DNA of 63,930 nt, counting the filler, from Octopus bimaculoides (Eukaryota), in assembly GCF_001194135.2 (NCBI RefSeq). It is 4 parts of 4 records of this genome, joined end to end, with 100 filler letters (N's around TTAATTAATTAA, not from the genome) between each part and the next. Parts side by side here need not be neighbours in the genome. Positions count along the whole stretch, not along the records: positions 1 to 30,863 come from NC_068981.1; 3 more parts are not named here. One strand, 5' to 3'. Positions within the stretch are counted from its first letter, which is position 1, and each line of letters begins with the position of its first letter. This document shows positions 6,622 to 30,595 of the stretch, in pieces. The notes beneath the pieces were generated by a model that was given only the letters and a program-made list of their open reading frames with translations, searched no databases and had not been told where the DNA came from. A program made the position numbers and the translations under genes.

Positions 6622-9600
6622 AATATAATGGCCGTCCACTCGTGACCGAGGAAGACCATTCCTGATCTTTAGGAACATTGTGCGCTCTATGACTAACTTA
6701 TATTTTGCATTTGCGGCTCCGGTGATGGCTAATGAGCCCTGCTCTTGACAAGCATACACGACTACAAACATTGCAAACCAAGCTTTCCCCATTCACTAAA
6801 CTAGCGGTGCGCTTTCGAGCAGCACGCTTAAATTCTTCATGCAGAATATGTGCGCTCTCAAAGGTATTGACCCCCTCCTTAACCTGCTTCCTCCATCTGT
6901 AGCGATGACAGGCATTGCTCTCCCAGTCAGTCTCCTGCATATCACAGGCTTTTAATGAGGACTTGACACAGTCCTTAAATCGTAGCCTTGGTTTCTACCG
7001 GGGTCTCTTTCCACTAACAAGTTCCCCATAGAGCATCTGTCCAACGTAACCGTGCTTGTGCACCATCACCTCAATACTCAAGATATCAGCTGTCTTCAGG
7101 ACTTGTGTGTTTGGAGTTTTTAAGGTCCAGCCAACATTCAGGATGTGTCTCAGACATCTCTGATGAAAGCGTTCAAGGACCCTTACATGACGTTTGTAAA
7201 GGGTCCATATCTCACATGAGTAAAGGAGCGATGTCAGTACACATACACAGTACACATCAATCTTTGCTTTGCGATGACATGCTGAGACCAGACACGAGAC
7301 TGAAGAAACCAGAAGGAATCAGTTGCTCTCTCCAACCTGAAAGATATTTCATTATCCAGGGAGCAAGAACGGCTGGGTGTGCTGCCCAGGTAGACAAACT
7401 TTTCTACCACTTTCAGAATTGTTCTTTCAACCGAGACAGCTGGTTCCACATGTGGATTTCCTGGTGCAGGCTGGAACATTACAACAGTCTTATCCAGGCT
7501 AATACTGAATCCAAATGTCTTGCAAGAAGCAGAAATACGATTCTTAAGTATTTGCATGTCATCCACTGTATGAGTGACTAAGTCACAGTCATCTGCATAA
7601 AGAAGGTCACGAATAAGAGAACGGAAAACTTTTGATCTGGCAGCAAATCGGCGCAGATTTAGGAGGCGGCCAGACGTCATTTACGAGATACGCATTCAGG
7701 CGGCTAAGAAGAATATTTGCCAGAACCTTACCAGTAGCTGATAAAGCAATACCTCCGTAGTTACCACACATTGTTCTGACTCCTTTTCCTTGAAAGAGAG
7801 GAAGAATAATTGCATCGTTCCAGTCCTTAGGCATTGCACCATCCCTCCAGACTACACCAATAAGATCATGAAGGGACAGTGTGATATAATCACCACCAAA
7901 TTGCAAGACCTCAGCACAAATTCCATTCCTTCTAGGTGCCCTACTAAGATTCAATTTATTTATTGATGTCATTAGCTCATCTATTAAGGGCGTAGAATTT
8001 AAGGAGCCAATGATAGGTTTTTGGGGCATAGTATCAATCACTGTTTCATCCACAACTGACTCATGTTTTAGGAGTTCAGAGAAGTGTTCAGTCCAGTGAC
8101 CTGTGACTTCTGTTGATTTAGTAAACAGAGTAGAAGACTCCTTGGAAAGCAAAGGAGGTGATGCAGAGTTCTTATGCCCATAAACTTGCTTCATAAGATG
8201 GTAAAGCATCTTGCTGTCACTCGCATCAGCAGCAGCCTGAACATCACAAACAAGATCATCTCACCTAGTGTTCTGCATCTTCCTGAGAGATCGCTGCAGT
8301 AGTGATTTAACACTGCTATAGTGTGAAAGTGCTAGATTTCGCTGCACAGCTGAAAATCCTCTGTGCAGCAATACATTGTGGGCATGGCGTTTTACAACCA
8401 ATAGTCGTATATCCCAGTGTTTCAGCAGCACATTGAAGAACTTGGTCTCGAAAATCTTCCCATACTGTAGTATTTTCAATGCTGGAGAAGCGAGTCTGAA
8501 GCTCTTTCCTCAACACAGCATCATATATCTTGTGGACATTCAGACGCCGAGGAATGTCAACTGGCACTCTTCTCTCTTTCACTCTTATCATCATCCGGAA
8601 CTTTGCTCGTACCAGACTGTGGTCTGTCTAGCATTCCGATCCATGAAAGGACTTGATATTACAAATGTTATAGATGTCACGCATGCAGATGTTGACCAGC
8701 AAGTGCCAAACTTTAGACTTTGGATGCATCCACGTTGTTGTGTGATCACCTTTGTGCATAAAATGAGTGCTTGCGATATAAAGTCAATGTCCATCGCAAA
8801 GCTCTAGCAGTATGAGACCATTGCTATTCATTTTCCCTACACCAACTTCTTAACGATATCAGATCGAACTGCAAAGCCAACACCAGCATCTCTGCTCTCC
8901 TCCTTCTGTTTCTCCTTCCAAAAAAAGATGTATCCACCTCCTACTTCCTCAAACTGACCATTACTTTCTATACAAGTCTCTGAAAGGGCAGTTATATCAA
9001 TGTTATAACGGTTCAGCTCGCGCGCAACAAGTGCAGTGCGTCTTTCAGGCCTACAGTCAGTCTTGTTATCCAACTGAGTGCGCACATTCCAACATGAAAC
9101 GTTCAAGTTCCATCCAGATTTTGTAAAAAAAAAAAGTCTCTTTGTATTTCGAGCACAGGGTGGACATCCGTCAGTCGCGCTAAACTGACCAGATACAGAA
9201 AGACAGGCAATTTTTGGTTCATCTTTTCTAGAACATCCCCGGCCTCCGGATGAACAGTGCCCTCTCCAAATGGAGCTGCTCAGACACCCATGCAGCAACC
9301 GAATCCTATCGCTGACTTGGGCGACAAGGAGACGACTTTATATCTAGCATGGGCCACCTACGTGCAGGTCGCTGACAACATGCTTCCAACCTGTCAGATC
9401 TGCATGCTTCGCCACCTTCCCATCGCCGCAGGACTTCTGGATAAAAATAAAATAAATATATACTAAAAATAAAGACACATATATACTGAAAATAACATAA
9501 ATATATATAGGGGAAATAGCGGCACAAACCGAGCAGAGGTCAGCAATGGCAGAGTTTTAGGTTCAATAAGGCTTGCACGACACCTCATAGGCCCTCTCCA

Positions 9601-10070: not shown

Positions 10071-10079
10071 ATACATACA

Positions 10080-10113
<34 letters not shown>

Positions 10114-10126
10114 CATACATACATAC
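10071..10126. repeat. (ATAC)n microsatellite, 5' flank of the R4/Dong cluster
   Basis: Direct reading of ~14 ATAC units. Confidence 0.95.
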
Positions 10127-11554
10127 GTTCAATAAAACAATGGCCCACAGTGTGTTTGCAGTACCAGCACTCATACCAACATTTGGACTACTTGATTGGA
10201 CGCTTGATGAGATCTGAGCCATTGATGTGAAAACCCGAAAAATACTTTCCGCATAAACAGTCACGTAGACCGCCTCTACCTAAAACGTAAACGAGGCGGC
10301 AGTGGCTTAATATCGATCCAAAATGCCTTTGAATGTCGTATTATATCCCTTCGACAACATCTTTTAACTACCAAGTCTTGAAGTGCATCCCTTGACCAAG
10401 TTTGCATACATGAGGTTGTTAACATCATAAGATTTGGAAGGCAGCTCCTTGAGCAAAATTCCTTGTCTGATAACTTAGAATACATGCCCAAAGAAGTCAC
10501 ACGACTCTACCACAACGTATCATCAGATGAAAGGATGAGACTATATGAGCAGAATTCTATGCATGGATATGTTAGTAGAAAGCTCCGAGATGATAGTAAC
10601 ATCGATCATCAAAGCAGTTGATCATGGACCAATAGCCGGATTACTACCTACAACTTTGAAGGGTATGCGTTTGTAATCCAGGAACAAGTAATATCAACCA
10701 AATACCTGAGGCACAAAAGGGATAGAAATGCAGGAAAGGCAGTGAAATGTAATAAACGATGCAGGCTTTGTGGAGTCAACACCGAAGATATCACCCACAT
10801 CATAAGCAGTTGTCCGAAAATGTCATCACGGTATTATCTACCTATGAGACGTGATGTAGTTAGGACCCTATAATGAAATCCGTCGGAAGGATAACCCTGG
10901 AGACAAAGAAATAAGAACCCACAATATGGCAGAAGCCATAGCCAATCATAATAAAAAGGAGTACTGATGGAATATCCAAGTGAAGACCTCCATAAAATGT
11001 AAGCACAACAGACCTGATATAATGGTTTGGGATAGGGAAGAGAAACTGTGCACAGTTGTGGAAATTAGCTGCCCGGCAGGTGTTAACAATAAGCTGAAAA
11101 TTAGTGAAAAAGAGAACACCTATACTGAGTTATTGAGAAATCTGCAGCTACTCTATCCATATTACAAGTTCAGGTTTATACCAGTAATTATTGGGGCCCT
11201 GGGATATGTAACACACTGCCTAAATATCAATCTTGAAAAATTAGGCTTCTCAAAACCAGAAAGGAGAAAGCTAATTCGAAGACTACTGACCCAATCCATC
11301 ACTGGAACTGTAAAAATCTGTAAAACTTTCCAGAAGTTTATCATTTGGATATATATGAGCATGTCTAGATATGCAACTATATGTATGAGAATAAATACTT
11401 AAAATAAAACATACAAATCGGCACCGATACATACATACAAACGAAAATACCACGTTGTTGATATTGAAATTCCAATGAAGAAGCCTTGAATCTCTGTTAG
11501 AAACTGACTCTTTCTCTATTGGCAAGAAATCTTGAAATAAAACTGAACAATGAC
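10127..11554 (+). mobile_element. R4/Dong-clade non-LTR retrotransposon, copy A (5'-truncated, subfamily 1)
   Basis: FAVPALIPTFGLLDWT..IDVKTRKIL, VDRLYLKRKRGGSGL, zinc knuckle CRLCGVNTEDITHIISSC, RLE motifs HNRPDIMVWDREEK..VEISCP..EKENTY..PVIIGALG; the 3' UTR ends AACTGAACAATGAC-ATAC. Confidence 0.9.
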
Positions 11555-11558
11555 ATAC

Positions 11559-14500
11559 GTATTACAGAGAACTCGAAGTGACAAGTCGCGTATTTGGCGT
11601 GGGAGTCAATTTATCGAAAATACGATAAATACTATCTCCAACTTTGGAGCCTTGTTAAATAACTGGTTAATCTTCAGATGAATTAACAGAGGGAGCCTTT
11701 TATTCACGCTCGTAGTGATTTTCGACTGAAACTTGAATTTAGCATGCAGAGAGTTACTATAAACAACATGGCTGGACACAATAACAACGACACAACCGAG
11801 GAATAGAACGAAAACAACTGCTCAGTAGGTAAGCAAATTCTTTGTAGCTCCTACAGAAGAAACCATAATTACAAAACTCATTTCTCTTATGAATTGAATA
11901 CTGATTTATTTAACTGCTACAAGAAAACGAAACAAAACCCCGCTGTTGATTATATGATCGATTGAAATCATACTGGGACGATCTGCGTCCAGAATTAAAT
12001 CATTTTACTGCGAAGCAACTATGTCGACAAGCAAAATTTGTAGAACATAGAAAGAGGGTTAGTAACTGTAACTTTATTAAAAAATCGAAAATTCACCTTT
12101 TTCCCAACTATATAAACAAAATCGAAAGCGTGAATGATGCAAGACCACCAGGTGGTTGCTTGCCACATTCCAACAGATTCTATAGTGCCTGCCAGCCAAG
12201 CTACATTACTGGTACAGTAACTGACCACTGTTTCCCTACTATGGCTATGGTTAATATCAGGCAGAACTGCAACGATTATTGTAGTAGTAATGGTAGTCAG
12301 GGTTATATACCGGTGAAATGTGCCCTTGCTGAAATTTTCCGAGAAAAAATAACTTTGTCTTTGAAGTACTCTCTCAAGGAGAAAGTATTCTCTACCAAAG
12401 TAAGAAAAAAAAACATCAGATACGGTAATAAAAGCTGTTAACGAAATTGGTGATGAGTATTTACAGTAGTGTGACGAACCCATTTTCTGGCAGATTAACG
12501 CCTGTCTATATGCTCTGGCTACTACTGTAATGCAATACATGAATGACATTCAAAAAGTAAACAAAACCGAAACAACAAAGAAAGTACTATCATAGGTTTT
12601 GAAAACAGAGAAAAAAACTGGTTTACGGAAGACCATCAGTCATGTAACGATGCTTATTGCGTGCAAACAAGCAAATCACTGTACGTCCCATCAACAGAAA
12701 ATAAAGGAGATAGAAATGATGTTTAGAGACAGCAAAAAGAGGACACTCACTTGCAAACTGATTCCCCTCAAGCGGGAGTTAAAAGCTGTCAGTGAAACTC
12801 CGACATCAGAAGAGAATAACCGAGAGAACAATAAACAAATATTTGACCGGAACCAGGCAGAGACATGAGAGGAGGAGCAGTGAACATCGCAGGAACTCCT
12901 TCACGAGAAGACATAGACTCTGTTCTGTGGCTGGAAAAAATCCGAAGAAGTTATTGCTCCTGTGATACACCCAAAACATACAACATTGATGGTGAAACTC
13001 TTGCAACTGTGATCCAGAAACTCCAGGACGCAAAAGCGCCTGGAAGAGACTTGATCGTTGGATATTGGTACAAAAAGCTAACCTTCTACTGGCCATATTT
13101 TATCAATCTGTATCAGCAATCTCTCAATGGGAACCACACTGGTTAGCTCTGGCAGAGACAAAATTGATCCCCAAGTGCAGAACCACATACATGGCAAAAA
13201 AACTACCGGCCAATTCCATGCCAGAGCTTAATGTATAAGATATATACAGTATGTTTAAACCTCTTCCTCCAGGACCATTGTGAAACCAATAACATCATCA
13301 CAGCAGAACAAGCAGCTGGAATGAAGGGAGTCTGGAGATGTGCTGAGCAATTGTTAATCCACAAAACTGTGATGTCAGAGGTTCGAGAGCATAGGAGGAA
13401 CCTAGTTTCAATGTGGCTAGTCTACAAGAAAGCCTTTGACTCTGTTCCCCACTTATGGATGCTAGAAGCCCATCAACTTGCTAAAGTTCCAGTGAGCATA
13501 GTCAAAGTCATAGCTGATCTGACTTCAACTTGGGACACCATCTTGAAATTAAACATAAAGAGTGACTGTATTATCACTGATACAATACAGTATCGCAAAG
13601 GCATATTACAAGGGGACAGCTTCTCTGTGATGTTGTTTATACTTTCTGTAAACTCCTTGTCATTCATGTTAAGGAAGTCTGAAGGATATCTCACTGGTTC
13701 ACAAGGAAACAAAAATAACAAAATTACACACTGTTTCTTTGTGGATGACTTGAAACTTTATGCAAAGAATATGCACAAGATGAAAAAAAAGAGCTTTAGT
13801 CTAGTTACATTTTCAAAGGATGTAGGGTTGGAATTTGGTCAGGATAAATGTTGTTATATGATTGTGATAAGGGGGAAACCTCTAAACCAGACTAATAACA
13901 TCTCCATCAATGATTTGACTGTTTCCCCTATATCTGACAAGGAATATTACAGGTATCTAGGGGTGGATGAATGCAACATCTTTTAACTACCAACTCATGA
14001 AGTGCATCCCTTCACCAAGTTTACATACACGGGACTGGTAATATCATGAGACTTGGAAGGCAGCTCCTTGAGCAACATTCTTTGTCTGATAACCTAAAAT
14101 ACATGCTCAAAACGTCGCACGACTCTACCACAATGTGTCATCAGATGAAAGGATGAGCCTATATTACGCAGGGATATATTAGTAAAAATCTCTGAGTTGA
14201 TAGTAATATTGATCATCAAAGCAGTCTATCATGGACCAATATCCGGATTACTACCTACAACTTTGAAGGGTATGCGTTTGCAATCCAGGAACAGGAAATA
14301 TCAACCAAATACCTGAGGCACAAAGGGGATAGAAATACAGGAAAAGCAGTGAAATGTGACAAACTATGCAGACTATGTGGAGTCAACACCGAAGATGTCT
14401 GCCACATCATAAGCAGTTGTCCGAAAATACCATCACGGTGTTATCTACCAATGAGACGTGAGGTTGTAGCTAGGACACTCTATAATGATATCCATCGGAA

Positions 14501-15185
14501 GGATAACTCCGAGGACAAAGAAATTAGAACCCACAATATGGTAGAAGCCAAAGCCACTCATAATAAAAGGGAATGCTGGTGGAATATAAGCACAACAGAC
14601 CTGATATAATGATTTGGGATAGAGAAGAGAAAATGAGCGTAGTTGTGGAAATTAGCTGCCCAACAGATGTTAACACAAAGCTGAAGAACAGTGAAAAAGA
14701 GAACACCTGTGCTGAACTATTGAGAAATATGCAGTTACTCTATCCAGATTACAAGTTCAGGTTTATTATACCTGTAATTATTGGGGCCCTAAGATATGTA
14801 ATACACTGCCTAAATACCAATTTTGAGAAATTAGGCTTCTCAAAACCAGAAAGGAGAAAGCTAGTACTGTAAAAATTTGTAAGACTTTCTAAAAGTTTAT
14901 CATTTAAGTATATATGAGCATGTCTAGATATGTAAGTATATGTATGAGAATACATACATAAAAAAAACATACACATTTGTACGTATACATACATGCGTAC
15001 ATACATACATACATACATACATACATACATACATGCAAATATACAAACATACATACATACATACATACACACAAAAATTACCCAGTTGTTGATGTTGACA
15101 TTCCAATGAAGGAGCCTTGGATCTAGGTTAGAAACCGGCTCTTTCTCTATTGGCAAGAAATCTTGAAAGAAAACTGAATAATGAC
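11559..15185 (+). mobile_element. R4/Dong-clade element, copy B (apparently full length with internal deletion, subfamily 1)
   Basis: ~210-nt 5' UTR, ATG at ~11768, N-terminal FSYELNTDLFNCYKK..DYM..LKSYWDDLRPE..TAKQL (resembles the R4 N-terminal domain), KAPGRDLIVGYWYKKL, RT at 13231-13986, CRLCG knuckle at ~14370, RPDI-type RLE at ~14600; the 3' end AATGAC runs into (CATA)n. Confidence 0.92.
13231..13986 (+). pseudogene. Reverse transcriptase domain of R4/Dong copy B (degenerate)
   Basis: EQAAG, WLVYKKAFDSVPH, KGILQGDSFSVMLF, FFVDDLKLY, GLEFGQDKC, YRYLGV; flanked by frameshifts and stops. Confidence 0.92.
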
Positions 15186-15287
15186 ATGCATACATACATA
15201 CATACATACATACATACATACATACATGCATACATACATACATGCATACATACATACATACATACATACATACATACATACATACAT

Positions 15288-15772
15288 AAAAGACCGGATG
15301 AAGGTCATTTGATGCTCTAAACTTAGCCTAACAATAGACACCCCTCCATCCTTCCGTTATATTATTGAAAAGCATGTAGACATAAGTACTGATTGTGAAG
15401 AAAATCACTTAGAATTCAGTTTTCTTCCACCTGTGACTCTAACAATATAACCTGTTTTGAATGTTATTTATTTCACACAAAATAACACTAAACATGTATA
15501 TGCAAATTATTTACTTTTAATTAGAGCAACAGAAAAAATACGAATTTCCAACACTTTTATTTACTTTTTGAAAGACTCTTACAATTTACCAATTGCACCA
15601 TGATAAATCTGTTTCTAGAATGTAATTTTGTGGTACCCACTTTCCTTTGTTCGCTAATCACTGGCTATTTTGTTTAATGATTAATCTGGTCATATATTCA
15701 TGATTACCAAGTTGATGTTGCCTAGATGCTAATGTTTAGAGGCAGAGTTTTTTTTTAATAAAATTAAATGAA
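15288..15772. repeat. ~485-bp non-coding unit bounded by (CATA)n on both sides, copy 1
   Basis: Aligns by eye along its length with 16649-17372 (roughly 85% identical). Both copies start AAAAGACCG right after (CATA)n and end AAC-ATACATAC. Confidence 0.85.
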
Positions 15773-15798
15773 CATACATACATACATACATACATACA

Positions 15799-15829
<31 letters not shown>

Positions 15830-16648
15830 GAGACAAAGAGAGAAAAATCGAATTCACAAGACCCTTTATTATTCACTGTAATCGTTTCGATCCATTGTGC
15901 ATCGGTCCCTCACGGGTNNNNNNNNNNNNNNNNNNNNNNNNNNNNNNNNNNNNNNNNNNNNNNNNNNNNNNNNNNNNNNNNNNNNNNNNNNNNNNNNNNN
16001 NNNNNNNNNNNNNNNNNNNNNNNNNNNNNNNNNNNNNNNNNNNNNNNNNNNNNNNNNNNNNNNNNNNNNNNNNNNNNNNNNNNNNNNNNNNNNNNNNNNN
16101 NNNNNNNNNNNNNNNNNNNNNNNNNNNNNNNNNNNNNNNNNNNNNNNNNNNNNNNNNNNNNNNNNNNNNNNNNNNNNNNNNNNNNNNNNNNNNNNNNNNN
16201 NNNNNNNNNNNNNNNNNNNNNNNNNNNNNNNNNNNNNNNNNNNNNNNNNNNNNNNNNNNNNNNNNNNNNNNNNNNNNNNNNNNNNNNNNNNNNNNNNNNN
16301 NNNNNNNNNNNNNNNNNNNNNNNNNNNNNNNNNNNNNNNNNNNNNNNNNNNNNNNNNNNNNNNNNNNNNNNNNNNNNNNNNNNNNNNNNNNNTAGATGCA
16401 CACACTAACTCTATCGTATATTTACAAACTGCAGAACAGTTTTAAACAAAAGTCTTGTCACTTAATCAACAACTGGCTTGAACTCCATGAAGAACTTTAT
16501 ATGATTATACGTCCTTACACGCACGCGCACACCCGCACTCGTATGCGCAAACACAGACACACATACATACATACCTACATACATACATATATGCATGCAT
16601 ACATACATACATGCATGCATACATACATACATACATACATACATACAT

Positions 16649-17372
16649 AAAAGACCGAATAAAGCTCATTTGATGCTCTAACCTTTTAGCATATCCGGCC
16701 TAAATATTCTCCCTGTTCAAATATTCCACCTGTTCAAAATGGTAAGAGCTGGCCTGTTACGCCTACCCTACAATGTCATTCTAAAAATAAATCATATCAT
16801 CGAAATCATGAGGCTATAAGATAATGCATGATTAATTCAAAACAATATGAATAAATAAGCTTTACGTGTGACAGAAAAATCTGAATGCTAAAGGGCTAGG
16901 CATAGCTTAACAATAGATACCCACCCCCATCCTTCCGTTATATCATCGAAAAGCATTTAGACATAAGTAATGATTGTGAAGAAAAACACTTAAAATTCAG
17001 TTTCCTTCCATCCACCTGTGGCTCTAACAATACAACCTGTTTTTTAATGCTATTTATTTCACACAAAATATCACTAAACACTATATGCAAATTATTTACT
17101 TTTAATTAGAGCAACAGAAAAATGTAAATTTTCAACACTTTTATTCGTCCTTTTTTAAAGACTGTTACAATTTATCAATTGCACCATGATAAATCCGGTC
17201 CTAGAATGTAATTCTGTGGTACCCACTTCCCTTCGTTCACTAATCACTGGCTATGTTGTTTAATGATTAAGTTGGTCATCATATATTCATGACTACCGAG
17301 TTGGTGTTGCCTAAATTCTAATGAAAGAGCTTTTGTTTCAATACTGGAGAAATTTTTTGTTATAAAAGTAAA
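16649..17372. repeat. Same unit, copy 2, carrying a MITE insertion
   Basis: Homologous to 15288-15772 except for a ~220-bp insertion at 16679-16899. Confidence 0.85.
16679..16899. mobile_element. MITE with short TIRs (possibly piggyBac-type, CCYTT...AAGGG ends)
   Basis: Terminal inverted repeats TAACCTTTTAGCAT / ATGCTAAAGGGCTA. The element is absent at the homologous position (~15330) of copy 1. Confidence 0.75.
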
Positions 17373-17440
17373 CATACATACATACATACATACATACATA
17401 CATACATACATAATACGTCAAAACATACATACATGCATAC

Positions 17441-18224
17441 AAAAACCCGAAAAATACTAACAAGCACACAATTTCCACATAAGCAGTGACGCGGGGCGCC
17501 TCTACCTAAAAGGATATCTACCAATGAGACATGATGCTGTAGCTAGGATACTCTGTAATGAAATCCGTCGGAAGAGTAAGCCCGAGGACAAAGAAATAAG
17601 AACCCACAATATGGTAGAAGCCATAGCCACTCATAATAAAAATGAATACTGGTAGAATGTACCAGTGAAGACCTCAATAAAATGTAAGCACAACAGACCT
17701 GATATAATGATTTGGGATAGGGAAGAGAAACTGTGCACAGTTGTGGAAATTAGCTGCCCAGCAGATGTTAACATACAGCTGAAAATTAGTGAAAAAGAGA
17801 ACACCTATAATGAACTATTGACAAATCTACAGTTACTTTATCCATATTACAAGTTCAGCTTTATACCAGTAATTATTGGGGCCCTGGGATATGTAACACA
17901 CTGCCTAAATACCAATCTTGAAAAATTAGACTTGTCAAAAGCAGAAAGGAGAAAGCTAATTCGAAGACTACACATCCAATCCATCATTGGAACAGTAAAA
18001 ATTTGTAAAACTTTCCAGAAGTTTATCATTTAAATATATATGAGCATGTCTAGATATGCAACTATATGCAAGAGAATACATGCATAAAACATACAAATCT
18101 GCACATACATACATACATACATACATACAAAAATACCTTGTTGTTGATGTTGAAATTCCAATGAAGGTTAGAAACCGATTCTTTTTCTATTGGCAAGAAA
18201 TCTTGAAGTAAACTGAATAATGAC
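17441..18224 (+). mobile_element. R4/Dong copy C (5'-truncated, internally deleted, subfamily 1)
   Basis: KTRKILTS..RLYLK is joined directly to YLPMRHD, followed by HNRPDIMIWDREEK..PVIIGALG..KICKTFQKFII*. The 3' UTR ends TGAC-ATACATAC. Confidence 0.9.
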
Positions 18225-18249
18225 ATACATACATACATTTAAGTATATG

Positions 18250-19811
18250 CAGTCGTCCTCAAAATTATTCATACCTTTGTTAATTTTTGTGATTTTTTTA
18301 TTTTTATTTTGGTGATGAAATGAATCCATCTTGTCAAGTTTGTTTATGAGTTATATGTGACCAACAAATGAAAGAATAACAACAATACACGATTTTGGAA
18401 ATTCTTCATTTCAGGGATATTATATTCATGAATTTTCAAAAAATGCCATATTCAAAATTTTTCATACTCTAGGTTTACTGAGTCCAATATCTTTCTTTAA
18501 TAGTCAATAGCACAGCCTTTGTGTTTTTTTATGAATGCTTCTAGACGATTCTTGTACGTGTCCACAAGCTTCCTGCGTGTCTCTAGTGGAATGTTGGCCC
18601 ACTCTTCCTTGGCAAAAGCCTCGAGCTGGGTCAGTTTGGTTGGTTTCCTAGCCATCACTCTGGTCTTCAAGTTTCGCCACAAGTTCTCGATCGGATTCAG
18701 GACAGGGCTCTGACTTGGCCATTCTAGGACGTTGACATCTTTCTCCTTGAACTATTTCTTCACTGCCTTGGTGGTATGTTTCGGATCATTGTCCTGCTAG
18801 TACTTCCAGTTGTGGCCGAGTTGGAGCTTCTCAGCGGATTCCTTCACGTCTTCATCAAGGATCCTGATGCAATTCTCCTTTCTCATGATTCCGTGTACCT
18901 TGACAAGGTTCCTTGTGTCACTAGAAGAGAAGCATCCCCATAGCGTTATGTTTCCACCACTATGGACCGTAACACCTTCGTCCCTGCCTCGCCAAGCGTT
19001 TCAATTAGGGCCCTGGTTGTGGTCCGGTGGTTGTTGTTGACCTCTCGGCAGATTTTTCTGGCAAGTTTGGGAGACACTTTAGGTTTCCTNNNNNNNNNNG
19101 TGTACCTTGACAAGGTTCCTTGTGTCACTAGAAGAGAAGCATCCCCATAGCGTTATGTTTCCACCACTATGGACCGTAACACCTTCGTCCCTGCCTCGCC
19201 AAGCGTTTCAATTAGGGCCCTGGTTGTGGTCCGGTGGTTGTTGTTGACCTCTCGGCAGATTTTTCTGGCAAGTTTGGGAGACACTTTAGGTTTCCTGCCA
19301 CGCTCACTGAAGTTTTTAACAGTGTTGAATCTCTTGTACTTGTCGATTATGCTCTGGACGGTTGCCACAGGGACATCATACTGCTTTGAAATGGCCTTGT
19401 AACCTTTTCCTTCACTGTGGGCACACACAAGACGCTAACGTAGGTCCTCACTGAGCTCCTTCTTCTTGGCCATGATGATCAGAAACTGAGAATGACTAGA
19501 ACCCTTTTCCTCTATTTATATGTTATTTATACTCTATTTATACTCTTCCGGAAATAACTATAGGACAAAGATTAGCATATTCACAGGAAGTGAAAACAGG
19601 AGTATAAATAATTCTGAACATGTGCAAAAAAAAATCTATGGTTCTTATCTATTATTATGCAAATGAAGTTTAACTAACTCATATGTGGATTTGTGCATAG
19701 CAACAGGTAGACAAAAGATACACAGTAAGTACCAACATAATAGCTTACAAATGAAGAATCTAAAAAAGAATGCTAGTTTCAATGGAGTATAAATAATTTT
19801 GAGGACGACTG
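18250..19811 (-). mobile_element. Tc1-family DNA transposon with IR/DR-type ends, internally deleted
   Basis: TIRs CAGTCGTCCTCAAAATTATTCATAC (18250-18274) and GTATAAATAATTTTGAGGACGACTG (ending 19811), with inner repeats of the same motif at ~18451-18470 and ~19599-19619. The right end is followed by TA. Length includes a ~200-bp assembly duplication. Confidence 0.92.
18497..19473 (-). pseudogene. Tc1 transposase remnant (D34E spacing retained, first catalytic D deleted)
   Basis: MAKKKELSEDLR*..GKGYKAISKQ..RGRKPK (paired-like domain), QDNDPKH followed 34 residues after the D by E in WPSQSPVLNPIEN, and C-terminal EEWANIP; contains in-frame stops. Confidence 0.9.
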
Positions 19812-20091
19812 TATGCACAAGTCTCGACATGCAACTATATGCATGAGAATACATACATAAAACAAAACATACGTATCTGCACATGCACTAATTCCAAATA
19901 CTACACATATACATGCGTACATGCAAAAGATACCCTGTTGATGTTGAAAGTCCAATGAAGGAGCCTTAGATCAAGGTTGGAAATCAGTTATTTCTCTATT
20001 AAGAAGAAATCTTCAAATAAAACTGAATAATGACATACATACATACATACATACATACATACATACATACATACATACATACATACATACA

Positions 20092-20120
<29 letters not shown>

Positions 20121-20123
<3 letters not shown>

Positions 20124-21191
20124 AGGAAATCCGTCGGAAGGATAATCCCGAGGACAAAGAAATAAGAATCCACAATATGGTAGAAGCCATAGCCACTCAT
20201 AATAAAAAAGAATACTGGTGGAATGTCCCAGTGACGACCTCAATAAAATGTAAGCAAAACAGACTTGATATAAGGATTTGGGATAGAGAAGAGAAACTGT
20301 GTGCAGTTTAGCTGCCCAGCGGATGTTAACATAAAGCTGAAGATCAGTGAAAAAGAGAACACCTATACCGAACTATTGAGAAATCTGCAGTTACTCTATC
20401 CATATTACAAGTTCAGGTTTATTATACCTGTAATTATTCTTTTCTACTCTAGGCACGAGGCCTGAAATTTTGGGTGAGGAAGCCAGTCGATTAGATCGAC
20501 TCCAGTACGCAAGTGGTACTTAATTTACCGACCCCGAAAGGATGAGAGGCAAAGTCGACCTCGGCGGAATTTGAACTCAGAACGTAAAGATAGACGAAAT
20601 ACAACTAAGCATTTTGCCAGGCGTACTAACGTTTCTTATTTCTTTACTACCCACAAGGGACTACATACAGAGGGGACAAACAAGGACAGACAAAGGGATT
20701 AAGCCGATTACATCGACCCTACTGCGTAACTGGTACTTATTTAATCGGCCCCGAAAGGATGAAAGGCAAAGTCGACATCGGTGGTATTTGAACTCAGAAC
20801 GTAGCGGCAGACGAAATACCGCTAAGCATTTCGCCCGGCGTGCTAACGTTTCTGCCAGCTCGCCGCCTTATTCCTATAATTATTAGGGCCCTAGGAGAAT
20901 ATGTAACACACTGCCTAAATATCAATCTTGAGAAATTAGGCTTCTCAAATCCAGAAAGGAGAAAGTTAATTCGAAGACTACAGAGTCAATCCATCACTGG
21001 AACTGTAAAAATCTGTAAAACTTTCCAGAAGTTTATCATTTAAAGCAAAACATATAAATCTGCATACATAAATACATACATACATACCCTGTTGTTGATG
21101 ATGAAATTCCAATGAAGGCGCCTTGGATCTAGGTTCGAAATCGGCTCTTTCTCTATTGGCATGTAATCTTGAAATAAAACTGAACAATGAC
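20121..21191 (+). mobile_element. R4/Dong copy E (5'-truncated, subfamily 1), interrupted by a SINE dimer
   Basis: EIRRKDNPEDKEIR..YWWNVP..KCKQNRLDIRIWDREEK; resumes after the SINE with IIRALG..KICKTFQKFII*. Ends AACAATGAC-ATACATAC. Confidence 0.9.
20439..20869 (-). mobile_element. Head-to-tail dimer of tRNA-derived SINE family 2, with target-site duplication
   Basis: Head AAGGCGGCGAGCTGGCAGAAACGTTAGC and body GAGTTCAAAT..GTCGACTTTGCCTTTCATCCTTTCGGGG occur twice. TSD CCTGTAATTATT (20427-20438) / CCTATAATTATT (20873-20884). Confidence 0.9.
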
Positions 21192-21203
21192 ATACATACA
21201 TAC

Positions 21204-21476
21204 TTCATAGTCTGGATATAAAAGCTAGAGATTTCGAAGCAGTTGTCCATAGATATCCTCTTTTTCTTTGATTTTCAAAGAGATATTTATATCTGCAGGG
21301 CATCTGACCTCTGTGAATGGTACATACCTTTGCCCCTTGTCCTAAACAACATTATCCGGCCTGTTATGTTCACATCTGACAGAAGTTTTGATAAGAATAT
21401 TCCACCAGTATTCCTTGAATTGGTATTTATAAATGTATTCCACAACAGAGGGATTTTCTAAGTTTATTTCAGGGCA
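21204..21476 (-). mobile_element. Inverted fragment of R4/Dong subfamily 2 (RLE region)
   Basis: Reverse complement of 21838-22110; the minus ORF reads CPEINLENPSVVEYIYKYQFKEYWWNI..CEHNRPD. Confidence 0.88.
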
Positions 21477-22397
21477 AGCACTCAGCATACAGAAAACGAC
21501 TATGCATGAGTATGTTGCCCGGAAGCTTGAAGAAGGCAGTAGAATTGACACGAAGCACAGCCTCTCCTGGACACAAGACCACTACATCACATCACACTTT
21601 GAAGGCTATGCATTTGCAATCCAGGAACAGGAGATTGCCACAAAGTACTTGGTGAACAAGAGTGACAGTGACGCTTTTGCAATCCCATGGTGCAACCGCA
21701 AGTGTAGGTTATGTCATGTTTCTGTGGAAGACATCACGCATGTGACTAGCAGCTGTCCTAAGATGCCATCACGGTATTACCTCCTCATGAGGCACGATGT
21801 TGTTGCTAAAACAATTTACAATACCATCTGCAAAAAAGACTGTCCTGAAATAAACTTAGACAATCTCTCTGTTATGGAATACATTCATAAACACAAACTC
21901 AAGGATCACTGGTGGAATATTCCCACTAAAACATTTGTCAAATGTAAACATAACAGGCCGGATATTGTTGCTTGGGATAGAGGGGCAAAGGTATGAATCA
22001 TCATAGAGGTCAGCTGCCCTGCAGATATATATATCTCTTTGAAAATCAAAGAAAAGAGGATATCTATGGACAACTGCTTCGAAACCTCCAGATTCTATAT
22101 CCAGGCTATGAATTCATATTCATACCAATAATAATTGGAGAACTAGGTTTTGTTAGTAAATGCTTGAAGGAGAATCTGAATAAACTGGGATTTTCAGAAA
22201 GAGAAATCGACCGGCTGATTCGTACATTACAAGTGCAATCTATCAGTGGAGCAGTAAAAATATGCAAGAATTTTCTCAAGTTCCAAATGTGAATTTGTCT
22301 GTGTTAACTACAGCCCAAAGATGGAGCCTTGTATCTTTCTTGGAAACTGGGTACCTCGTCGGTGGAAGATTTATAATAATTAAAAAATAAAAGTGAC
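21477..22397 (+). mobile_element. R4/Dong copy F (subfamily 2, 5'-truncated)
   Basis: HFEGYAFAIQEQEIATKY, CRLCHVSVEDITHVTSSCP, HNRPDIVAWD..EVSCP, FIPIIIGELG, KICKNFLKFQM*. A different 3' UTR ends AAAAGTGAC-ATACATAC. Confidence 0.9.
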
Positions 22398-22699
22398 ATA
22401 CATACATGCGGAGCAAAAGAAACTGACACGCATCTTCGAAGTCCAATCTATTATAGCACAGTGAAAATTTACAAAATATTTCGAAAATTCTCAATCTTAG
22501 ATTCTTTAAATGAATATATACGCATATGTAAAATGTAAGCTTTATATTCGGTATCACATGCTTTACTAATTTCGTAAGAGCAACAGTACAGCACATGCAA
22601 GAGAAAACATATTTACTGTATATCTTGATGACGTGAGTGTTCGGAATGTCAAAGGTGTTTTAAAAAATCTCAAAAACAGTGATTTCTCTTGTGAATGGG

Positions 22700-23190
22700 T
22701 ATCGATCAGGAACACTGACTATTTTCAGTAATGACGCAGTGAAAACAACAGCTGAAGAAGATCCGCGTTAATGTATCGGAGACTTATCCCGGAGGCTTAA
22801 TATACCTTGGTCCATTGCGCAAGGTCATCTTAAGCATATTGGGTAAGTGTATAGAGAAGGGAAGTGGAACCTCATAAGCTATTCCTCGAGTATAAAGTAG
22901 TGCGTTCTACAACATAACCCAAGAAAAGATAAATTCATTTGGCTAACTCCATGCTCTGTATTCACCGGACCTTACTCCATCAGATTTTCACTTATTCAGA
23001 GCACTTGAACACTTTACCTATGGAAAAATATTCAGAAGCAGGGATGATGTCGAAACTGAACTCCAAATATTTTTTCTCTTCTTAAGAACCTGATTCTCCA
23101 TCTCCACCTCACTCACGAAGAATCAGAAAATTGATTCCGAGGTGGGAAAACATTATTACTTACAATGACAATTATATTTTGAATGAATAA
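22700..23190 (+). mobile_element. Mariner transposase relic, internally deleted
   Basis: A WVPHEL-like motif (..GKWNLISY/EPHKL, frameshifted) and YSPDLTPSDFHLFRAL (~22957); N-terminal VKTTAEEDPR..LSRRLNI..GHLKHIGK. Confidence 0.8.
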
Positions 23191-24069
23191 AAGTATTTAC
23201 GATCTGAAATTCTACATTAATGTTTGGTACTCATAAGATTATTCCTTTTTTGCTTTTGTTAAGGAAGTCAATAAGGTGTATTATCGACTCACCAACACAC
23301 CTGCGTTTTTTTTTCTTTGTTGTTTGTTTTGGGAGTTTTTTTTCACAAATTCTGGGTCGGTTGCGTCAGACGACACGCCTAAGGAAAACATTTTACACAC
23401 CGTACAACATCCGCTTTAATAAAACTTTATTGTAAATTATTTGCAACATTATTCTAACCGGCTTAAAGTAAATATCACTTTTGAGATTTGAAAATAAGCG
23501 TGAGTCACCTATCTATTCTCAATCAGTTAATGTTTCTACCGAAATAAAACCACGATTAAATGAATAGTGTGTTTGCTGACAGACATAACCCAAGACTCCA
23601 CGTTTCTCATTCTGTCACGTACATTAAATCAATACTCTTAACCAGGATTTTTGTAATTACTAAATAGACCCAGAATATCATCTGAAAATAGTCACAATGA
23701 GTAAATAACTGATCGTGACTGTAAGTAGAGGAAACACTGTAAATTGATGAATGTTTTACAAGTTTGCAACGCTGAGTTTAAACCTCGTGATTTATTACTC
23801 GGAGAGATGGAACTTACCAGGCTGAGTATACCGCCATACGCTAGTAGAAACCTATCACTCCCACTCATCTATAGCTTGTGGAACACATGCATGCTGAATA
23901 TAACCCTTTTTTTTTTTTTTTGTATGATAAATGTTTGCAAAACTAAGATGTAAGACTTTTATGGCATGGGTAAATGAACTGTGGAATTCTTAAATGCATT
24001 ATCAACGCAAGTAACGTGAAATAGGTTGCAAAAAAATTACGCTTCTTAGCTACAAACCTAGCGCGCTCA

Positions 24070-26239: not shown

Positions 26240-26976
26240 ATCACTGTTATTATAAGGGCGGCGGGATCTTTTTTAAAACGGGGGCCACATTTTTCATTAA
26301 TGTTTTACGTAGTGTTTTTGGTACCGAAAGACTTTCAAACTTCGTATACTTATCTATTTTGTGTTATAGAACAGAAAAATACTTTTGTATTCGAATTTAT
26401 TTCATGTAAAAAATTGTCTTATTTCGATAATTTCAACCANNNNNNNNNNNNNNNNNNNNNNNNNNNNNNNNNNNNNNNNNNNNNNNNNNNNNNNNNNNNN
26501 NNNNNNNNNNNNNNNNNNNNNNNNNNNNNNNNNNNNNNNNNNNNNNNNNNNNNNNNNNNNNNNNNNNNNNNNNNNNNNNNNNNNNNNNNNNNNNNNNNNN
26601 NNNNNNNNNNNNNNNNNNNNNNNNNNNNNNNNNNNNNNNNNNNNNNNNNNNNNNNNNNNNNNNNNNNNNNNNNNNNNNNNNNNNNNNNNNNNNNNNNNNN
26701 NNNNNNNNNNNNNNNNNNNNNNNNNNNNNNNNNNNNNNNNNNNNNNNNNNNNNNNNNNNNNNNNNNNNNNNNNNNNNNNNNNNNNNNNNNNNNNNNNNNN
26801 NNNNNNNNNNNNNNNNNNNNNNNNNNNNNNNNNNNNNNNNNNNNNNNNNNNNNNNNNNNNNNNNNNNNNNNNNNNNNNNNNNNNNNNNNNNNNNNNNNNN
26901 NNNNNNNNNNNNNNNNNNNNNNNNNNNNNNNNNNNNNNNNNNNNNNNNNNNNNNNNNNNNNNNNNNNNNNNNNNNA

Positions 26977-28902: not shown

Positions 28903-30595
28903 NNNNNNNNNNNNNNNNNNNNNNNNNNNNNNNNNNNNNNNNNNNNNNNNNNNNNNNNNNNNNNNNNNNNNNNNNNNNNNNNNNNNNNNNNNNNNNNNNN
29001 NNNNNNNNNNNNNNNNNNNNNNNNNNNNNNNNNNNNNNNNNNNNNNNNNNNNNNNNNNNNNNNNNNNNNNNNNNNNNNNNNNNNNNNNNNNNNNNNNNNN
29101 NNNNNNNNNNNNNNNNNNNNNNNNNTACGAAGGGAAAATGAAGGAGGACCCCAAAAATAAAAAAAAGAAAAGAAAACGCTAAAACATCATGTCTCACATC
29201 AACACAACATACCAAAATAAAACGAAAACGCACCCTCAACAAACACAGAAAATTCTACCGCAACCCCAACCCTTCCAGTACCACAATCATCAACATATCC
29301 ACTGCTACCACCACCAGCACCACCAACACTACCACAGCCGCATCAGTCCACTAAAAGAAACACACGCATCAGCAACAACCAACCACACTGACACCAAACT
29401 TCGTGCTAGTGAGGAGGGCAAACGAAGAATTGATGGCTTTCCTAACACGAAGTAAGGATGTCGAGACAGAGTGGAGGGGGGTGATTTTCGGCACCAGCAC
29501 TTATTAAGTGCCATAAACATTAATGATGGTGCGTATGTCACTGGAAACTAACAAAAACATTAGGGAAGGCTTCCTTCATGATGTGGGAACCCCTAATGTG
29601 AAATCCCCGACTAGGATTTTAAGAAGGTTTTCAAAGGAACCCCAGTCAGATGTAGAGGTCGAACAATTTGACTTCCAAAAGCACCCGGAGGAGAAATAGC
29701 CCCACATTTTTCTCTTCTCTTCCCAGTTACTGTGACAGGTTTATAGGTGGTTTGTATTAAATACACGTGACTGGAGTCACCCTGGAAGCAAGGTCGCCAG
29801 CCAAACGACCTCAGGTTACTAGCCATAGATGTGACAGCCATCAGCGAGACCAGGACACACACACACACACACTAGCCTCTGTCTTTGACGACTTTGAGAT
29901 CTACACATCTTTTAGTCGGCCTGGAATGGTAGGTGGGGGACAGTGCCGTTTAGGGGAGGCCTGAATCTCGAAATACGGAGTATCTTCCTGGACCCGGAAG
30001 CTAGGTTGGTGGTCCTAGTCGTGAACAGTATTGAAGATGGTGCTTTTAGACTAGTCATTGTGCACGCCTCGACTGAGGAGGAGCTACCGAATTCTTTCAG
30101 GTGTTTGGAGGTTTTCTTGAGACGTCCCTCGCTTTAGTGCTAATGGACGATAGGAACGCATTCTTAGATGCACCTCTGGACTGCGAGGCTTGCAAATAGA
30201 AGAGGAGGCTGTAGAAAACTCACAAACGAGCTCAATTGGCTGACAGGTACCGTCTGGGCTTCCTGAAAGCGCCAATATGGACATGGGTAAATAGTCAGAG
30301 CCCCGGATACAGGAAACTGAATGCGTCTTTCTCGGTGCATCAAACCTTCAGAGACCGGTTTAGCAAGTTAGTCCATCGAAGTTGACGGATGCAATCACCA
30401 ACAACCGTTGGTGGACATCCCTCAAAAGGGCTATTAGTAAAGAAATAATAATAGAGAAGTCTAGTGTAGAGAAAGACCTAGTTAGGAAGCTAGAAGAGAT
30501 ACGTAGAAAAGGCATAGCGATCGACGTACAGGCAGCGAGATTGGCTCTGGACCAATTCTTCAGCGCCAAGCATGAAGGTTGTGTTGTCAGAGTTA
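28070..30595 (+). mobile_element. Tx1/L1-type LINE 5' half (ORF1-like region plus APE endonuclease), decayed
   Basis: ORF1-like HVMVEGRRPRC..LKAFCP (collapsed zinc knuckle). ORF2-like IDVTAISETR, DPEARLVVLVV..FRLVIVHAS, LVLMDDRNAFLD (GDxNA-like) and linker NNRWWTSLKRAI..AKHEGCVVR. Gap and microsatellites lie inside. Confidence 0.7.

What the first reader, a model, noticed from the sequence alone, without database searches (positions are those of the whole stretch)
10071..22410. Cluster of six co-oriented R4/Dong retrotransposons apparently targeting (TACA)n microsatellites
Seen: copies A-F are all on the plus strand, each starts in or right after a CATA-repeat tract, and each ends at TGAC followed by ATAC/ATGC-CATA repeats (11551, 15182, 18221, 20031, 21188, 22394). 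This holds for two subfamilies with otherwise different 3' UTRs. The window has many other CATA, TA and CA tracts, but these copies are confined to ~12 kb. Known: R4-clade elements carry an RLE and can be site-specific (R4 in nematode rDNA, Dong in (TAA)n). Inference: a lineage specific for a tetranucleotide, inserting repeatedly beside earlier copies. I do not recall a (TACA)n-specific R4 family, but cannot check the databases.
Basis: partly seen in the sequence, partly recalled or inferred. Interest (0 to 1): 0.78.

Follow-up and report, generated by a model that had tools for sequence, protein, structure and literature searches.

The report
Microsatellite-targeting Dong-like retrotransposon array
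A 12-kb stretch of an animal (probably cephalopod) genome holds six dead, same-direction copies of a Dong-like jumping gene. It and its relatives in other genomes insert into (ACAT)n or (ACTT)n four-letter repeats instead of the (TAA)n repeats known for Dong, so this is a natural change of target within a known family.

Summary
Six 5'-truncated or degraded copies of one LINE family lie on the + strand between 10128 and 22395. All six end at TG followed by (ACAT)n, and all start directly after an (ACAT)n tract.

The elements carry a reverse transcriptase, a CCHC knuckle and a restriction-like endonuclease. They form a 98-100% supported clade next to (TAA)n-flanked Dong-like elements.

Relatives fetched from at least seven other assemblies, one of them Argonauta hians, carry the same tetranucleotide on both flanks: (ACAT)n or, in sister families, (ACTT)n. 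This also holds for 5'-truncated copies and for copies with no older copy upstream. They often form the same head-to-tail arrays.

A covarying 3'UTR stem-loop is shared across the clade and was found again in copies not used to define it.

Best reading: a Dong-like lineage retargeted from (TAA)n to tetranucleotide microsatellites, with each insertion renewing its own target. No paper found describes this target for Dong/R4; Repbase and Dfam could not be checked.

Caveats: all window copies are dead, the linkage of A-B with C-F rests on a scaffold gap, and clade assignment lacks named reference sequences.

The parts
10071..10126 (+). (ATAC)14 tract at the 5' flank of copy A. No family 3' end lies upstream of it.
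   Evidence: TRF. Covariance model R1 gives no hit upstream.
10128..11552 (+). Copy A. It is 5'-truncated at about aa 751 of a 1158-aa relative. It holds the thumb region, the CCHC knuckle (about 10760-10813), the restriction-like endonuclease ORF (10980-11402; RPD...VVEIS motif) and the 3'UTR. Tail: ACATAC at 11553-11558.
11559..15183 (+). Copy B, the longest copy. Order of parts: 5'UTR; degraded N-terminal Myb-like region (about 11840-12080); reverse transcriptase (12859-13974); a deletion of about aa 721-831; CCHC and endonuclease (14349-14872); an internal (ACAT)n tract in the 3'UTR (14985-15073). It has many stops and frameshifts.
   Evidence: (RVT_1, E 1.3e-15).
15184..15288 (+). (ACAT)26 tail of copy B.
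   Evidence: TRF.
15289..15771 (+). U1, an unclassified repeat unit with (ACAT)n on both sides, followed by (ACAT)14 at 15772-15828. It is 87.5% identical to U2.
15829..16552 (.). Spacer that holds the assembly gap 15918-16392. It is not LINE sequence and is unique in the window.
16553..17441 (+). Imperfect (ACAT)24 (16553-16649), then U2 (16650-17371, with an extra 217 nt at 16686-16902), then about 17 ACAT units (17372-17441) that form the 5' flank of copy C. A 40-nt block (30 of 40 identical) that ends about 38 nt before U2's 3' end matches the LINE 3'UTR. U2 has no stem-loop.
   Evidence: (0 of 500 shuffles).
17442..18222 (+). Copy C. It is 5'-truncated, has an internal deletion, retains aa 979-1157 and has a 15-nt deletion in the stem-loop region. 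Tail: (ACAT)4 at 18223-18238.
18239..20032 (+). Copy D, 3'UTR only (18239-18250 plus 19812-20032). It is split by a nested DNA transposon.
   Evidence: (D14).
18251..19811 (-). Nested Tc1/Sleeping-Beauty-like DNA transposon with terminal inverted repeats and an internal deletion. It holds the 10-N gap and the 197-nt assembly duplicate.
   Evidence: D13; HTH_SB, E 1.5e-13.
20033..20121 (+). Perfect (ACAT)22. It is both the tail of D and the 5' flank of E.
   Evidence: TRF.
20122..21189 (+). Copy E. It is 5'-truncated at about aa 1003 and interrupted at 20441-20870 by an unclassified 430-nt insert with a 12-nt target duplication. Tail: (ACAT)3 at 21190-21201.
   Evidence: (D16).
21202..22395 (+). 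Copy F, a second subfamily. 21204-21476 is an inverted copy of 21841-22112. The direct part covers aa 901-1157 plus the 3'UTR. Tail: (ACAT)3 at 22396-22407.
15111..15141 (+). Conserved 3'UTR stem-loop, shown here for copy B. The same element lies at 11480-11510 (A), 19960-19990 (D), 21117-21147 (E) and 22323-22353 (F).
   Evidence: Out-of-sample hits in L086 and L087.

Best explanation
The cluster is a graveyard of independent insertions of a Dong-like LINE into one (ACAT)n microsatellite locus. This LINE type has a reverse transcriptase followed by a CCHC knuckle and a restriction-like endonuclease, and no AP endonuclease.

Shown:
- The domain architecture.
- The head-to-tail array.
- The cognate tetranucleotide on both sides of every copy, here and in relatives.
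- The family-specific motif: ACAT or ACTT, against TAA in the neighbouring clade.
- A covarying 3'UTR stem-loop.

Inferred, by analogy with R2 and Dong:
- The protein binds the 3'UTR stem-loop of its own RNA.
- An N-terminal three-helix Myb-like domain reads the repeat DNA.
- The endonuclease nicks the (ATGT)n strand.
- The (ACAU)n 3' tail of the RNA pairs with the nicked strand and sets the register.
- Target-primed reverse transcription then copies the RNA, often incompletely, which gives the 5' truncations.

Each insertion leaves (ACAT)n on both sides. The target is therefore renewed and later copies land beside earlier ones in the same orientation.

All six copies are now inactive. They carry stops, frameshifts and deletions, and two hold nested insertions.
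For: Architecture.
- Pfam RVT_1 matches copy B.
- A profile of the family aligns to solved R2 proteins (9nl3, 9dou; E about 3e-52) across the reverse transcriptase, thumb, CCHC and endonuclease regions.
- Full-length relatives have a single ORF of 1130-1200 aa with no AP-endonuclease or zinc-finger Pfam hit.

Flanks in the window..

Flanks in relatives.
- ACAT type: L001 has (TACA)66 at the 5' side and (ACAT)23 at the 3' side. L002 has (CATA)41 at the 5' side. L085 (Argonauta hians) has (ACAT)14 at the 5' side and an ACAT/ACAC tail. L086 has two copies separated by (ACAT)231.
- ACTT type: L003, L004, L005, L006, L084 (three copies) and L087 (three copies).
- Sources.
- One assembly (ERZ25878469) holds both an ACAT-type family (L001) and an ACTT-type family (L084). 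The motif therefore goes with the family and not with the genome.
- More distant relatives (about 29% aa identity) carry (TAA)n.

Trees. The tetranucleotide clade has 98-100% support and the (TAA)n clade 93-100%.

Stem-loop.
- 85% of cells are paired, against 69% in shuffles (0 of 500 reach the observed value).
- 9 of 10 pairs show compensatory changes.
- Slid controls give 18-48% paired.
- The model finds the stem-loop out of sample in four new copies, on the right strand and at the right place.
- Over 240 kb of the window and other loci it otherwise matched only the 13 sequences it was built from, plus one weak hit (E 0.25) in copy B's 5'UTR.

N-terminal domain. It can be aligned with that of the (TAA)n-type relatives.
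Against: - No biochemical evidence exists for this family, and every window copy is dead.
- The window has no free (ACAT)n tract, so preference over background cannot be measured here.
- Four of the six 5' tracts in the window are simply the tails of the preceding copy.
- Rfam found no HDV-like ribozyme at the 5' ends.
- The Foldseek search of the N-terminal model gave no significant hit.
- ACAT and ACTT types are not cleanly separated in the tree.
- Flank duplications in L001, L084 and the window (U1/U2) show that processes other than simple insertion also shaped these arrays.
- The join between A-B and C-F crosses an assembly gap.
Confidence: 0.8

Rival explanations
1. The (ACAT)n is only an element-encoded 3' tail and insertion is not targeted. 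On this reading the cluster arose by chance, or because the region tolerates insertions.
For: Many LINEs end in short tandem repeats. In the window, four of six 5' tracts are the tail of the copy upstream.
Against: - 5'-truncated copies start directly at the tract: A, C and E here; L003, L084 copy 2 and L086 copy 1 elsewhere.
- Solitary or first-in-array copies have long 5' tracts with no family 3' end upstream: A, L001, L002, L003, L085.
- All family fragments and all ACAT tracts of the window coincide.
Confidence: 0.05
2. The array grew mainly by segmental duplication or unequal crossing-over between (ACAT)n tracts, and not by repeated insertion.
For: - U1 and U2 are 87.5% identical and sit on either side of a spacer.
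- L084 has a 687-nt block repeated on both sides of a copy at 95% identity.
- L001 has (GATA)n plus a 58-nt block on both sides.
Against: - The six LINE copies have six different 5' ends, different internal deletions and two subfamilies. They are not copies of one another.
- Duplication may explain U1/U2 but not copies A-F.
Confidence: 0.08
3. Targeting is driven by pairing of the RNA tail with any nick or free end in a matching repeat, and not by sequence-specific recognition and cleavage by the protein. Older copies' tails would then be the main landing sites.
For: - Tails and targets are identical, so the data cannot separate the two mechanisms.
- Arrays are common.
- L001 looks as if it was primed in a near-cognate (GATA)n tract.
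Against: - Related families in one genome keep different motifs.
- The N-terminal domain differs between the (TAA)n and tetranucleotide clades in its third helix. This fits protein-level recognition, but it is only a correlation.
Confidence: 0.2
4. The co-orientation and clustering of all six copies is partly an assembly artefact, because A-B and C-F are joined across a gap of estimated length.
For: The gap at 15918-16392 has unique, untestable flanks. A second gap in the region is a clear assembly artefact.
Against: Each side alone is already an array: A-B on the left and C-D-E-F on the right. Contiguous long-read contigs of other species show the same arrays (L084, L086, L087).
Confidence: 0.1

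Closest known systems
Dong (Bombyx mori), DongAg and DongBg: R4-clade LINEs specific for (TAA)n
   Same: - Single ORF with a reverse transcriptase, then a CCHC knuckle, then a restriction-like endonuclease.
- N-terminal Myb-like region without zinc fingers.
- Insertion into a microsatellite that also forms the tail, with head-to-tail arrays.
- (TAA)n-flanked relatives form the neighbouring clade (PMC3812793, PMC7998251).
   Different: - The target is a tetranucleotide, (ACAT)n or (ACTT)n, and not (TAA)n.
- Only about 29% aa identity to the (TAA)n-flanked relatives.
- No HDV-like ribozyme was detected.
Waldo (WaldoAg1/2, WaldoFs1): R1-clade LINEs specific for (ACAY)n
   Same: Essentially the same microsatellite class is used as target (PMC3812793).
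   Different: Waldo is an AP-endonuclease-type element of the R1 clade. The elements here have a C-terminal restriction-like endonuclease and no AP endonuclease. The shared target is convergent.
R2 (28S rDNA-specific; solved structures 8gh6, 9dou, 9nl3)
   Same: The reverse transcriptase, thumb, CCHC and endonuclease core can be aligned at E about 3e-52. The mechanism is presumably the same: binding of the 3'UTR RNA, then target-primed reverse transcription.
   Different: The N-terminus has no zinc finger. The target is a microsatellite and not rDNA. The tail is a tandem repeat.
R4 (nematode 28S rDNA)
   Same: The same clade as Dong according to the literature, with the same architecture.
   Different: R4 targets rDNA.
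Other microsatellite-specific LINEs: Kibi (TC)n, Koshi (TTC)n, Mino (AC)n, Togen (TG)n and some HERO families
   Same: The same strategy of using a simple repeat as a safe landing site (PMC3812793, PMC4640811).
   Different: They belong to different clades (R1 clade, NeSL-related, HERO) and use different motifs.

Membership tests
[quoted passage not shown] | LINE-type reverse transcriptase | tested here: met
   RVT_1 matches copy B at E 1.3e-15 and relatives at E 1e-22 to 1e-31.
[quoted passage not shown] | CCHC knuckle and PD-(D/E)XK restriction-like endonuclease C-terminal to the reverse transcriptase; no AP endonuclease | tested here: met
   The family profile aligns to R2 structures through CRxC...H...C and the KPD / (D/E) / K motifs. 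The motifs are visible in copies A, B, C and F. No Exo_endo_phos hit in full-length relatives.
[quoted passage not shown] | N-terminal Myb/SANT-like domain without zinc fingers (PMC7998251) | tested here: inconclusive
   A conserved block of about 75 aa can be aligned with the N-terminus of (TAA)n-type relatives. The AF2 model has three helices and pLDDT 78. Foldseek gave nothing significant and Pfam gave no hit.
[quoted passage not shown] | Groups with the R4 and Dong reference sequences in a reverse-transcriptase phylogeny | not testable with these tools
   No named R4, Dong, HERO or NeSL sequences could be fetched. As a proxy only, the family is the neighbouring clade to elements flanked by (TAA)n, the Dong signature.
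[quoted passage not shown] | Target is (TAA)n (Dong) or a 28S rDNA site (R4) | tested here: not met
   The flanks are (ACAT)n here, and (ACAT)n or (ACTT)n in close relatives. This is the point of difference.
[quoted passage not shown] | HDV-like self-cleaving ribozyme at the 5' end (PMC3774820) | tested here: inconclusive
   Rfam at E<=1 found none in copy B or in the eight full-length or nearly full-length relatives searched. Such ribozymes are poorly caught by covariance models.
Waldo / R1 clade, (ACAY)n-specific | N-terminal AP endonuclease | tested here: not met
   There is no AP-endonuclease domain. The endonuclease is of the C-terminal restriction-like type.
R2 clade | N-terminal zinc finger(s) plus Myb domain, and a 28S rDNA target | tested here: not met
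   No zinc-finger hit in the N-terminus. The flanks are microsatellites. R2 aligns only from the reverse transcriptase onward.
NeSL/Utopia/Togen group | N-terminal zinc fingers and, in NeSL, a cysteine protease domain | tested here: not met
   No such Pfam hits in six full-length proteins. Phylogenetic exclusion was not tested.

The most novel reading that the evidence does not exclude
This is an undescribed and widely spread sub-clade of Dong-like elements that moved from (TAA)n to tetranucleotide microsatellites. It has at least two targets, (ACAT)n and (ACTT)n, which coexist in one genome. All members share one covarying 3'UTR stem-loop. The clade would be a natural series of retargeted R2-superfamily integrases. 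Its N-terminal domains and RNA tails could show how the target is read. Second-strand cleavage in a neighbouring tract might also explain the 0.1-0.7 kb flank duplications.
Probability: 0.45. Interest if true: 0.6.

Novelty: new variant of a known kind. Interest (0 to 1): 0.5.

Why it matters
Site-specific LINEs of the R2 superfamily are being developed as tools for gene insertion, and how they choose their target is only partly understood.

A clade whose members differ mainly in the microsatellite they use ((TAA)n, (ACAT)n, (ACTT)n) offers a natural comparison. It could locate the determinants of specificity in three places: the N-terminal Myb-like domain, the endonuclease and the RNA tail.

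The finding also explains part of the origin and clustering of ACAT-type microsatellites in these genomes. It warns that such microsatellite markers sit next to repeated DNA.

The general strategy, a LINE living in a simple repeat, is already known. This is an extension of it and not a new principle.

Tried and rejected
- Rfam scans for an HDV-like ribozyme gave only microsatellite-driven microRNA false matches.
- RNAalifold on the last 110 nt of the window copies alone gave a weak structure. The stem-loop became clear only after relatives were added.
- Foldseek on the N-terminal model gave no significant match, so "Myb-like" rests on the literature and on helix pattern.
- The listing of cluster members, tried in order to name source organisms, timed out.
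- An exact look-up of a window ORF to find the source record found nothing. The species therefore stays unknown; the only named relative is from Argonauta hians.
- BLAST of U1, U2, the gap flanks and B's 5'UTR against all fetched loci found nothing.
- ARAGORN found no tRNA-like part in the insert in copy E.
- The covariance model did not pick up the similar-looking hairpins of the (TAA)n-type 3'UTRs. Their homology is seen by eye only.
- I tried by hand to fit an HDV-like fold to the 5' ends of L004 and L005 and gave up without a convincing fit.
- Seven literature searches found no (ACAT)n- or (TACA)n-specific LINE with a restriction-like endonuclease.
Full report
**1. What is in the window**

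Reading 9.5-23.2 kb together with TRF, repeat finding, self-BLAST and tblastn with a full-length relative gives this order, all on the + strand:

- (ATAC)14, 10071-10126
- Copy A, 10128-11552
- Short tail
- Copy B, 11559-15183
- (ACAT)26
- Repeat unit U1, 15289-15771
- (ACAT)14
- Spacer holding the 475-N gap
- Imperfect (ACAT)24
- U2, 16650-17371
- About 17 ACAT units
- Copy C, 17442-18222
- (ACAT)4
- Copy D, 18239-20032, split by a minus-strand Tc1/Sleeping-Beauty-like transposon at 18251-19811
- (ACAT)22
- Copy E, 20122-21189, with a 430-nt insert at 20441-20870
- (ACAT)3
- Copy F, 21202-22395
- (ACAT)3

Family coding sequence occurs nowhere else in the window. All 20 perfect (ACAT)>=3 tracts lie inside the cluster and all read ACAT on the + strand.

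**2. The gaps**

The 10-N gap at 19090-19099 is bracketed by an exact 197-nt direct repeat inside the nested DNA transposon. Removing one copy gives a continuous transposase reading. This is an unmerged overlap and does not touch the LINE copies.

The gap at 15918-16392 lies in spacer that matches nothing else. Continuity across it cannot be tested, so the linkage of A-B with C-F depends on the scaffold. Each side is an array on its own.

**3. What the copies are**

- Copy B has a Pfam reverse transcriptase.
- Copies A, B, C and F show CRLCx10Hx4C followed by KHNRPDI...VVEISCP.
- A profile of 20 full-length relatives aligns to solved R2 proteins (9nl3, 9dou, 9nl2; E 3e-52 to 6e-46). The alignment runs through the reverse transcriptase, thumb, CCHC knuckle and restriction-like endonuclease.
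- Full-length relatives are single ORFs of 1130-1200 aa with no AP endonuclease and no zinc finger in the N-terminus.
- Their first 75 residues or so form a conserved block...RRNRDYS..F.WT.ELN.DL..CY..A....GYMKR.K.LWD..HPE...F..K.LR.QA..I.KK. It is predicted as three helices with pLDDT 78.
- This block can be aligned with the N-terminus of (TAA)n-flanked relatives. That fits the Myb/SANT-like domain reported for R4/Dong (PMC7998251). The fold search was not significant.

The six window copies are all dead. They have different 5' ends:

| Copy | 5' end / extent |
|---|---|
| A | aa 751 |
| B | near full length, but lacks aa 721-831 |
| C | about aa 785, then a deletion to aa 979 |
| D | 3'UTR only |
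| E | about aa 1003 |
| F | aa 901 |

They are 78-96% identical to each other, so they are old and independent insertions. F is a second subfamily.

**4. Target or tail?**

The window cannot decide this alone, because most 5' tracts are the tails of the copy before. I therefore fetched relatives.

*ACAT-type relatives*

- L001 is a full-length element, with its coding region in two overlapping frames, between (TACA)66 and (ACAT)23.
- L002 has (CATA)41 at its 5' end.
- L085, from Argonauta hians, is a full-length copy with (ACAT)14 at the 5' side and an ACAT/ACAC tail.
- L086 has two different families in tandem, arranged (ACAT)23 / copy / (ACAT)231 / copy / (ACAT)8.

*ACTT-type sister families*

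- L003: (TTAC)30 at the 5' side and (CTTA)7 at the 3' side.
- L004: the motif on the 5' flank.
- L005: the motif on both flanks.
- L006: the motif on the 3' flank.
- L084: three co-oriented copies.
- L087: three copies.
- Sources.

L001 and L084 come from the same assembly. Two related families in one genome therefore keep two different motifs.

5'-truncated copies (L003, L084 copy 2, L086 copy 1; A, C and E here) abut the tract directly at their truncation point. First-in-array or solitary copies (A, L001, L002, L003, L085) have no family 3' end upstream of the tract. These facts are what targeted insertion predicts. A mere encoded tail does not predict them.

**5. Relationship to Dong**

In the metagenome scan, relatives at about 29-32% identity carry (AAT)n, which equals (TAA)n, at the 3' end. 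They also carry it at the 5' end where that end is visible. This is the Dong signature (PMC3812793, PMC7998251).

Neighbour-joining trees separate a tetranucleotide clade (98-100% bootstrap; it includes the window) from the (TAA)n clade (93-100%). Within the first clade, ACAT and ACTT types are not resolved.

I could not obtain named R4, Dong, HERO or NeSL sequences. Clade membership is therefore inferred from architecture and from this proxy.

**6. A shared RNA element**

About 30 to 135 nt before the tail (40-80 nt in the copies used to define it), all families have a stem-loop. Its layout is a 4-bp outer helix, UU, a 6-bp inner helix, a 5-nt loop, then the return strands with one unpaired C.

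On 13 sequences:
- 85% of cells pair, against 69% in shuffles (0 of 500 reach this).
- 9 of 10 pairs show compensatory changes.
- Slid controls give 18-48% paired.

I chose the structure by eye from these same sequences, which favours it. So I built a covariance model and searched loci fetched afterwards. It found the element in four new copies (L086 copy 1 and L087 copies 1-3) on the + strand, just upstream of each tail, at E 3e-6 to 7e-5. In 240 kb of other sequence it otherwise matched only the 13 sequences it was built from, plus one weak hit (E 0.25) in copy B's 5'UTR.

By analogy with R2, this is the likely binding site for the element's protein.

**7. Mechanism**

Shown: the architecture, the flanks, the arrays and the stem-loop.

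Inferred:
- The protein bound to the stem-loop RNA recognises the repeat through its N-terminal domain.
- It nicks the (ATGT)n strand.
- The (ACAU)n RNA tail pairs with that strand.
- Reverse transcription follows, and each insertion regenerates the target on both sides.

A weaker alternative is that tail pairing alone drives the choice.

**8. Comparison and novelty**

The open literature I could search lists these microsatellite targets (PMC3812793, PMC4640811):

| Element | Target |
|---|---|
| Dong | (TAA)n |
| Waldo (AP-endonuclease type, R1 clade) | (ACAY)n |
| Mino | (AC)n |
| Kibi | (TC)n |
| Koshi | (TTC)n |
| Togen | (TG)n |
| Some HERO families | microsatellites |

Octopus genome papers report abundant and recently active Dong-R4 families but say nothing about their target (PMC13282606, PMC8967140). 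I found no report of an (ACAT)n- or (ACTT)n-specific Dong-like element. Repbase and Dfam may well hold these families.

I rate this a new variant of a known kind, of moderate interest.

**9. Unexplained**

In three places the sequence upstream of a 5' tract recurs downstream of the 3' tract:
- L001: (GATA)n plus a 58-nt block.
- L084: a 687-nt block at 95% identity.
- The window: U1 and U2 around the spacer.

Possible readings are long target duplications caused by a second nick in a neighbouring tract, non-autonomous passengers, or local duplication. All three remain open.

Noticed in passing
window 18251-19811 (- strand): A Tc1/Sleeping-Beauty-like DNA transposon with terminal inverted repeats is nested in copy D. 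It has an internal deletion of the catalytic-domain start. It also holds a 197-nt exact duplicate around a 10-N gap, which is an assembly artefact.
   Followed up: partly
window 20441-20870: A 430-nt insert lies in copy E. It is made of two units of about 150 nt that are 84% alike, and it is flanked by a 12-nt direct repeat (CCTGTAATTATT / CCTATAATTATT). It looks SINE-like, but ARAGORN finds no tRNA part.
   Followed up: partly
window 21204-21476 versus 21841-22112: The 5' part of copy F is an inverted duplicate (83-95% complementary) of an internal part of the same copy. This could be a 5' inversion or snap-back formed during reverse transcription, or a second, inverted fragment.
   Followed up: partly
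window 15289-15771 and 16650-17371: U1 and U2 are 87.5% alike and share the same first base, and each has (ACAT)n on both sides. U2 has an extra 217 nt. A 40-nt block that ends about 38 nt before U2's 3' end resembles the LINE 3'UTR, but U2 has no stem-loop. They could be non-autonomous passengers, a long target duplication or a local duplication.
   Followed up: partly
window 14985-15073, 11427-11440, 18103-18129, 21063-21085: The main subfamily carries a second, internal (ACAT)n tract inside its 3'UTR, about 110 nt before the end. Its length varies from about 3 to 22 units between copies. Copy F lacks it.
   Followed up: no
L001 2167-2503 and 6766-6870: (GATA)n plus a 58-nt block occurs both upstream of the 5' (TACA)n and downstream of the 3' (ACAT)n, at about 93% identity. 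This may be a long target duplication primed in a near-cognate (GATA)n tract.
   Followed up: partly
L084 5700-6386 and 11029-11708: A 687-nt block (95% identity) is repeated on both sides of one element copy. Each block ends in (CTTA)n.
   Followed up: partly
window 8837-9298 (- strand): A fragment of an unrelated AP-endonuclease-type LINE (Exo_endo_phos, E 5.5e-6) lies just upstream of the cluster.
   Followed up: no
window about 22700-23200 (+ strand): By eye this region translates to the C-terminal part of a mariner-type transposase, with stops. It was not checked with a profile.
   Followed up: no
L008, L009, L013, L015-L019, 3'UTRs: By eye, the (TAA)n-flanked relatives have a hairpin of similar layout (outer helix, two unpaired bases, 6-bp helix, loop, C) in their short 3'UTRs. 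The covariance model did not detect them.
   Followed up: partly
window 1070-1541, 26440-26975, 28903-29125: Three further assembly gaps lie outside the finding.
   Followed up: no
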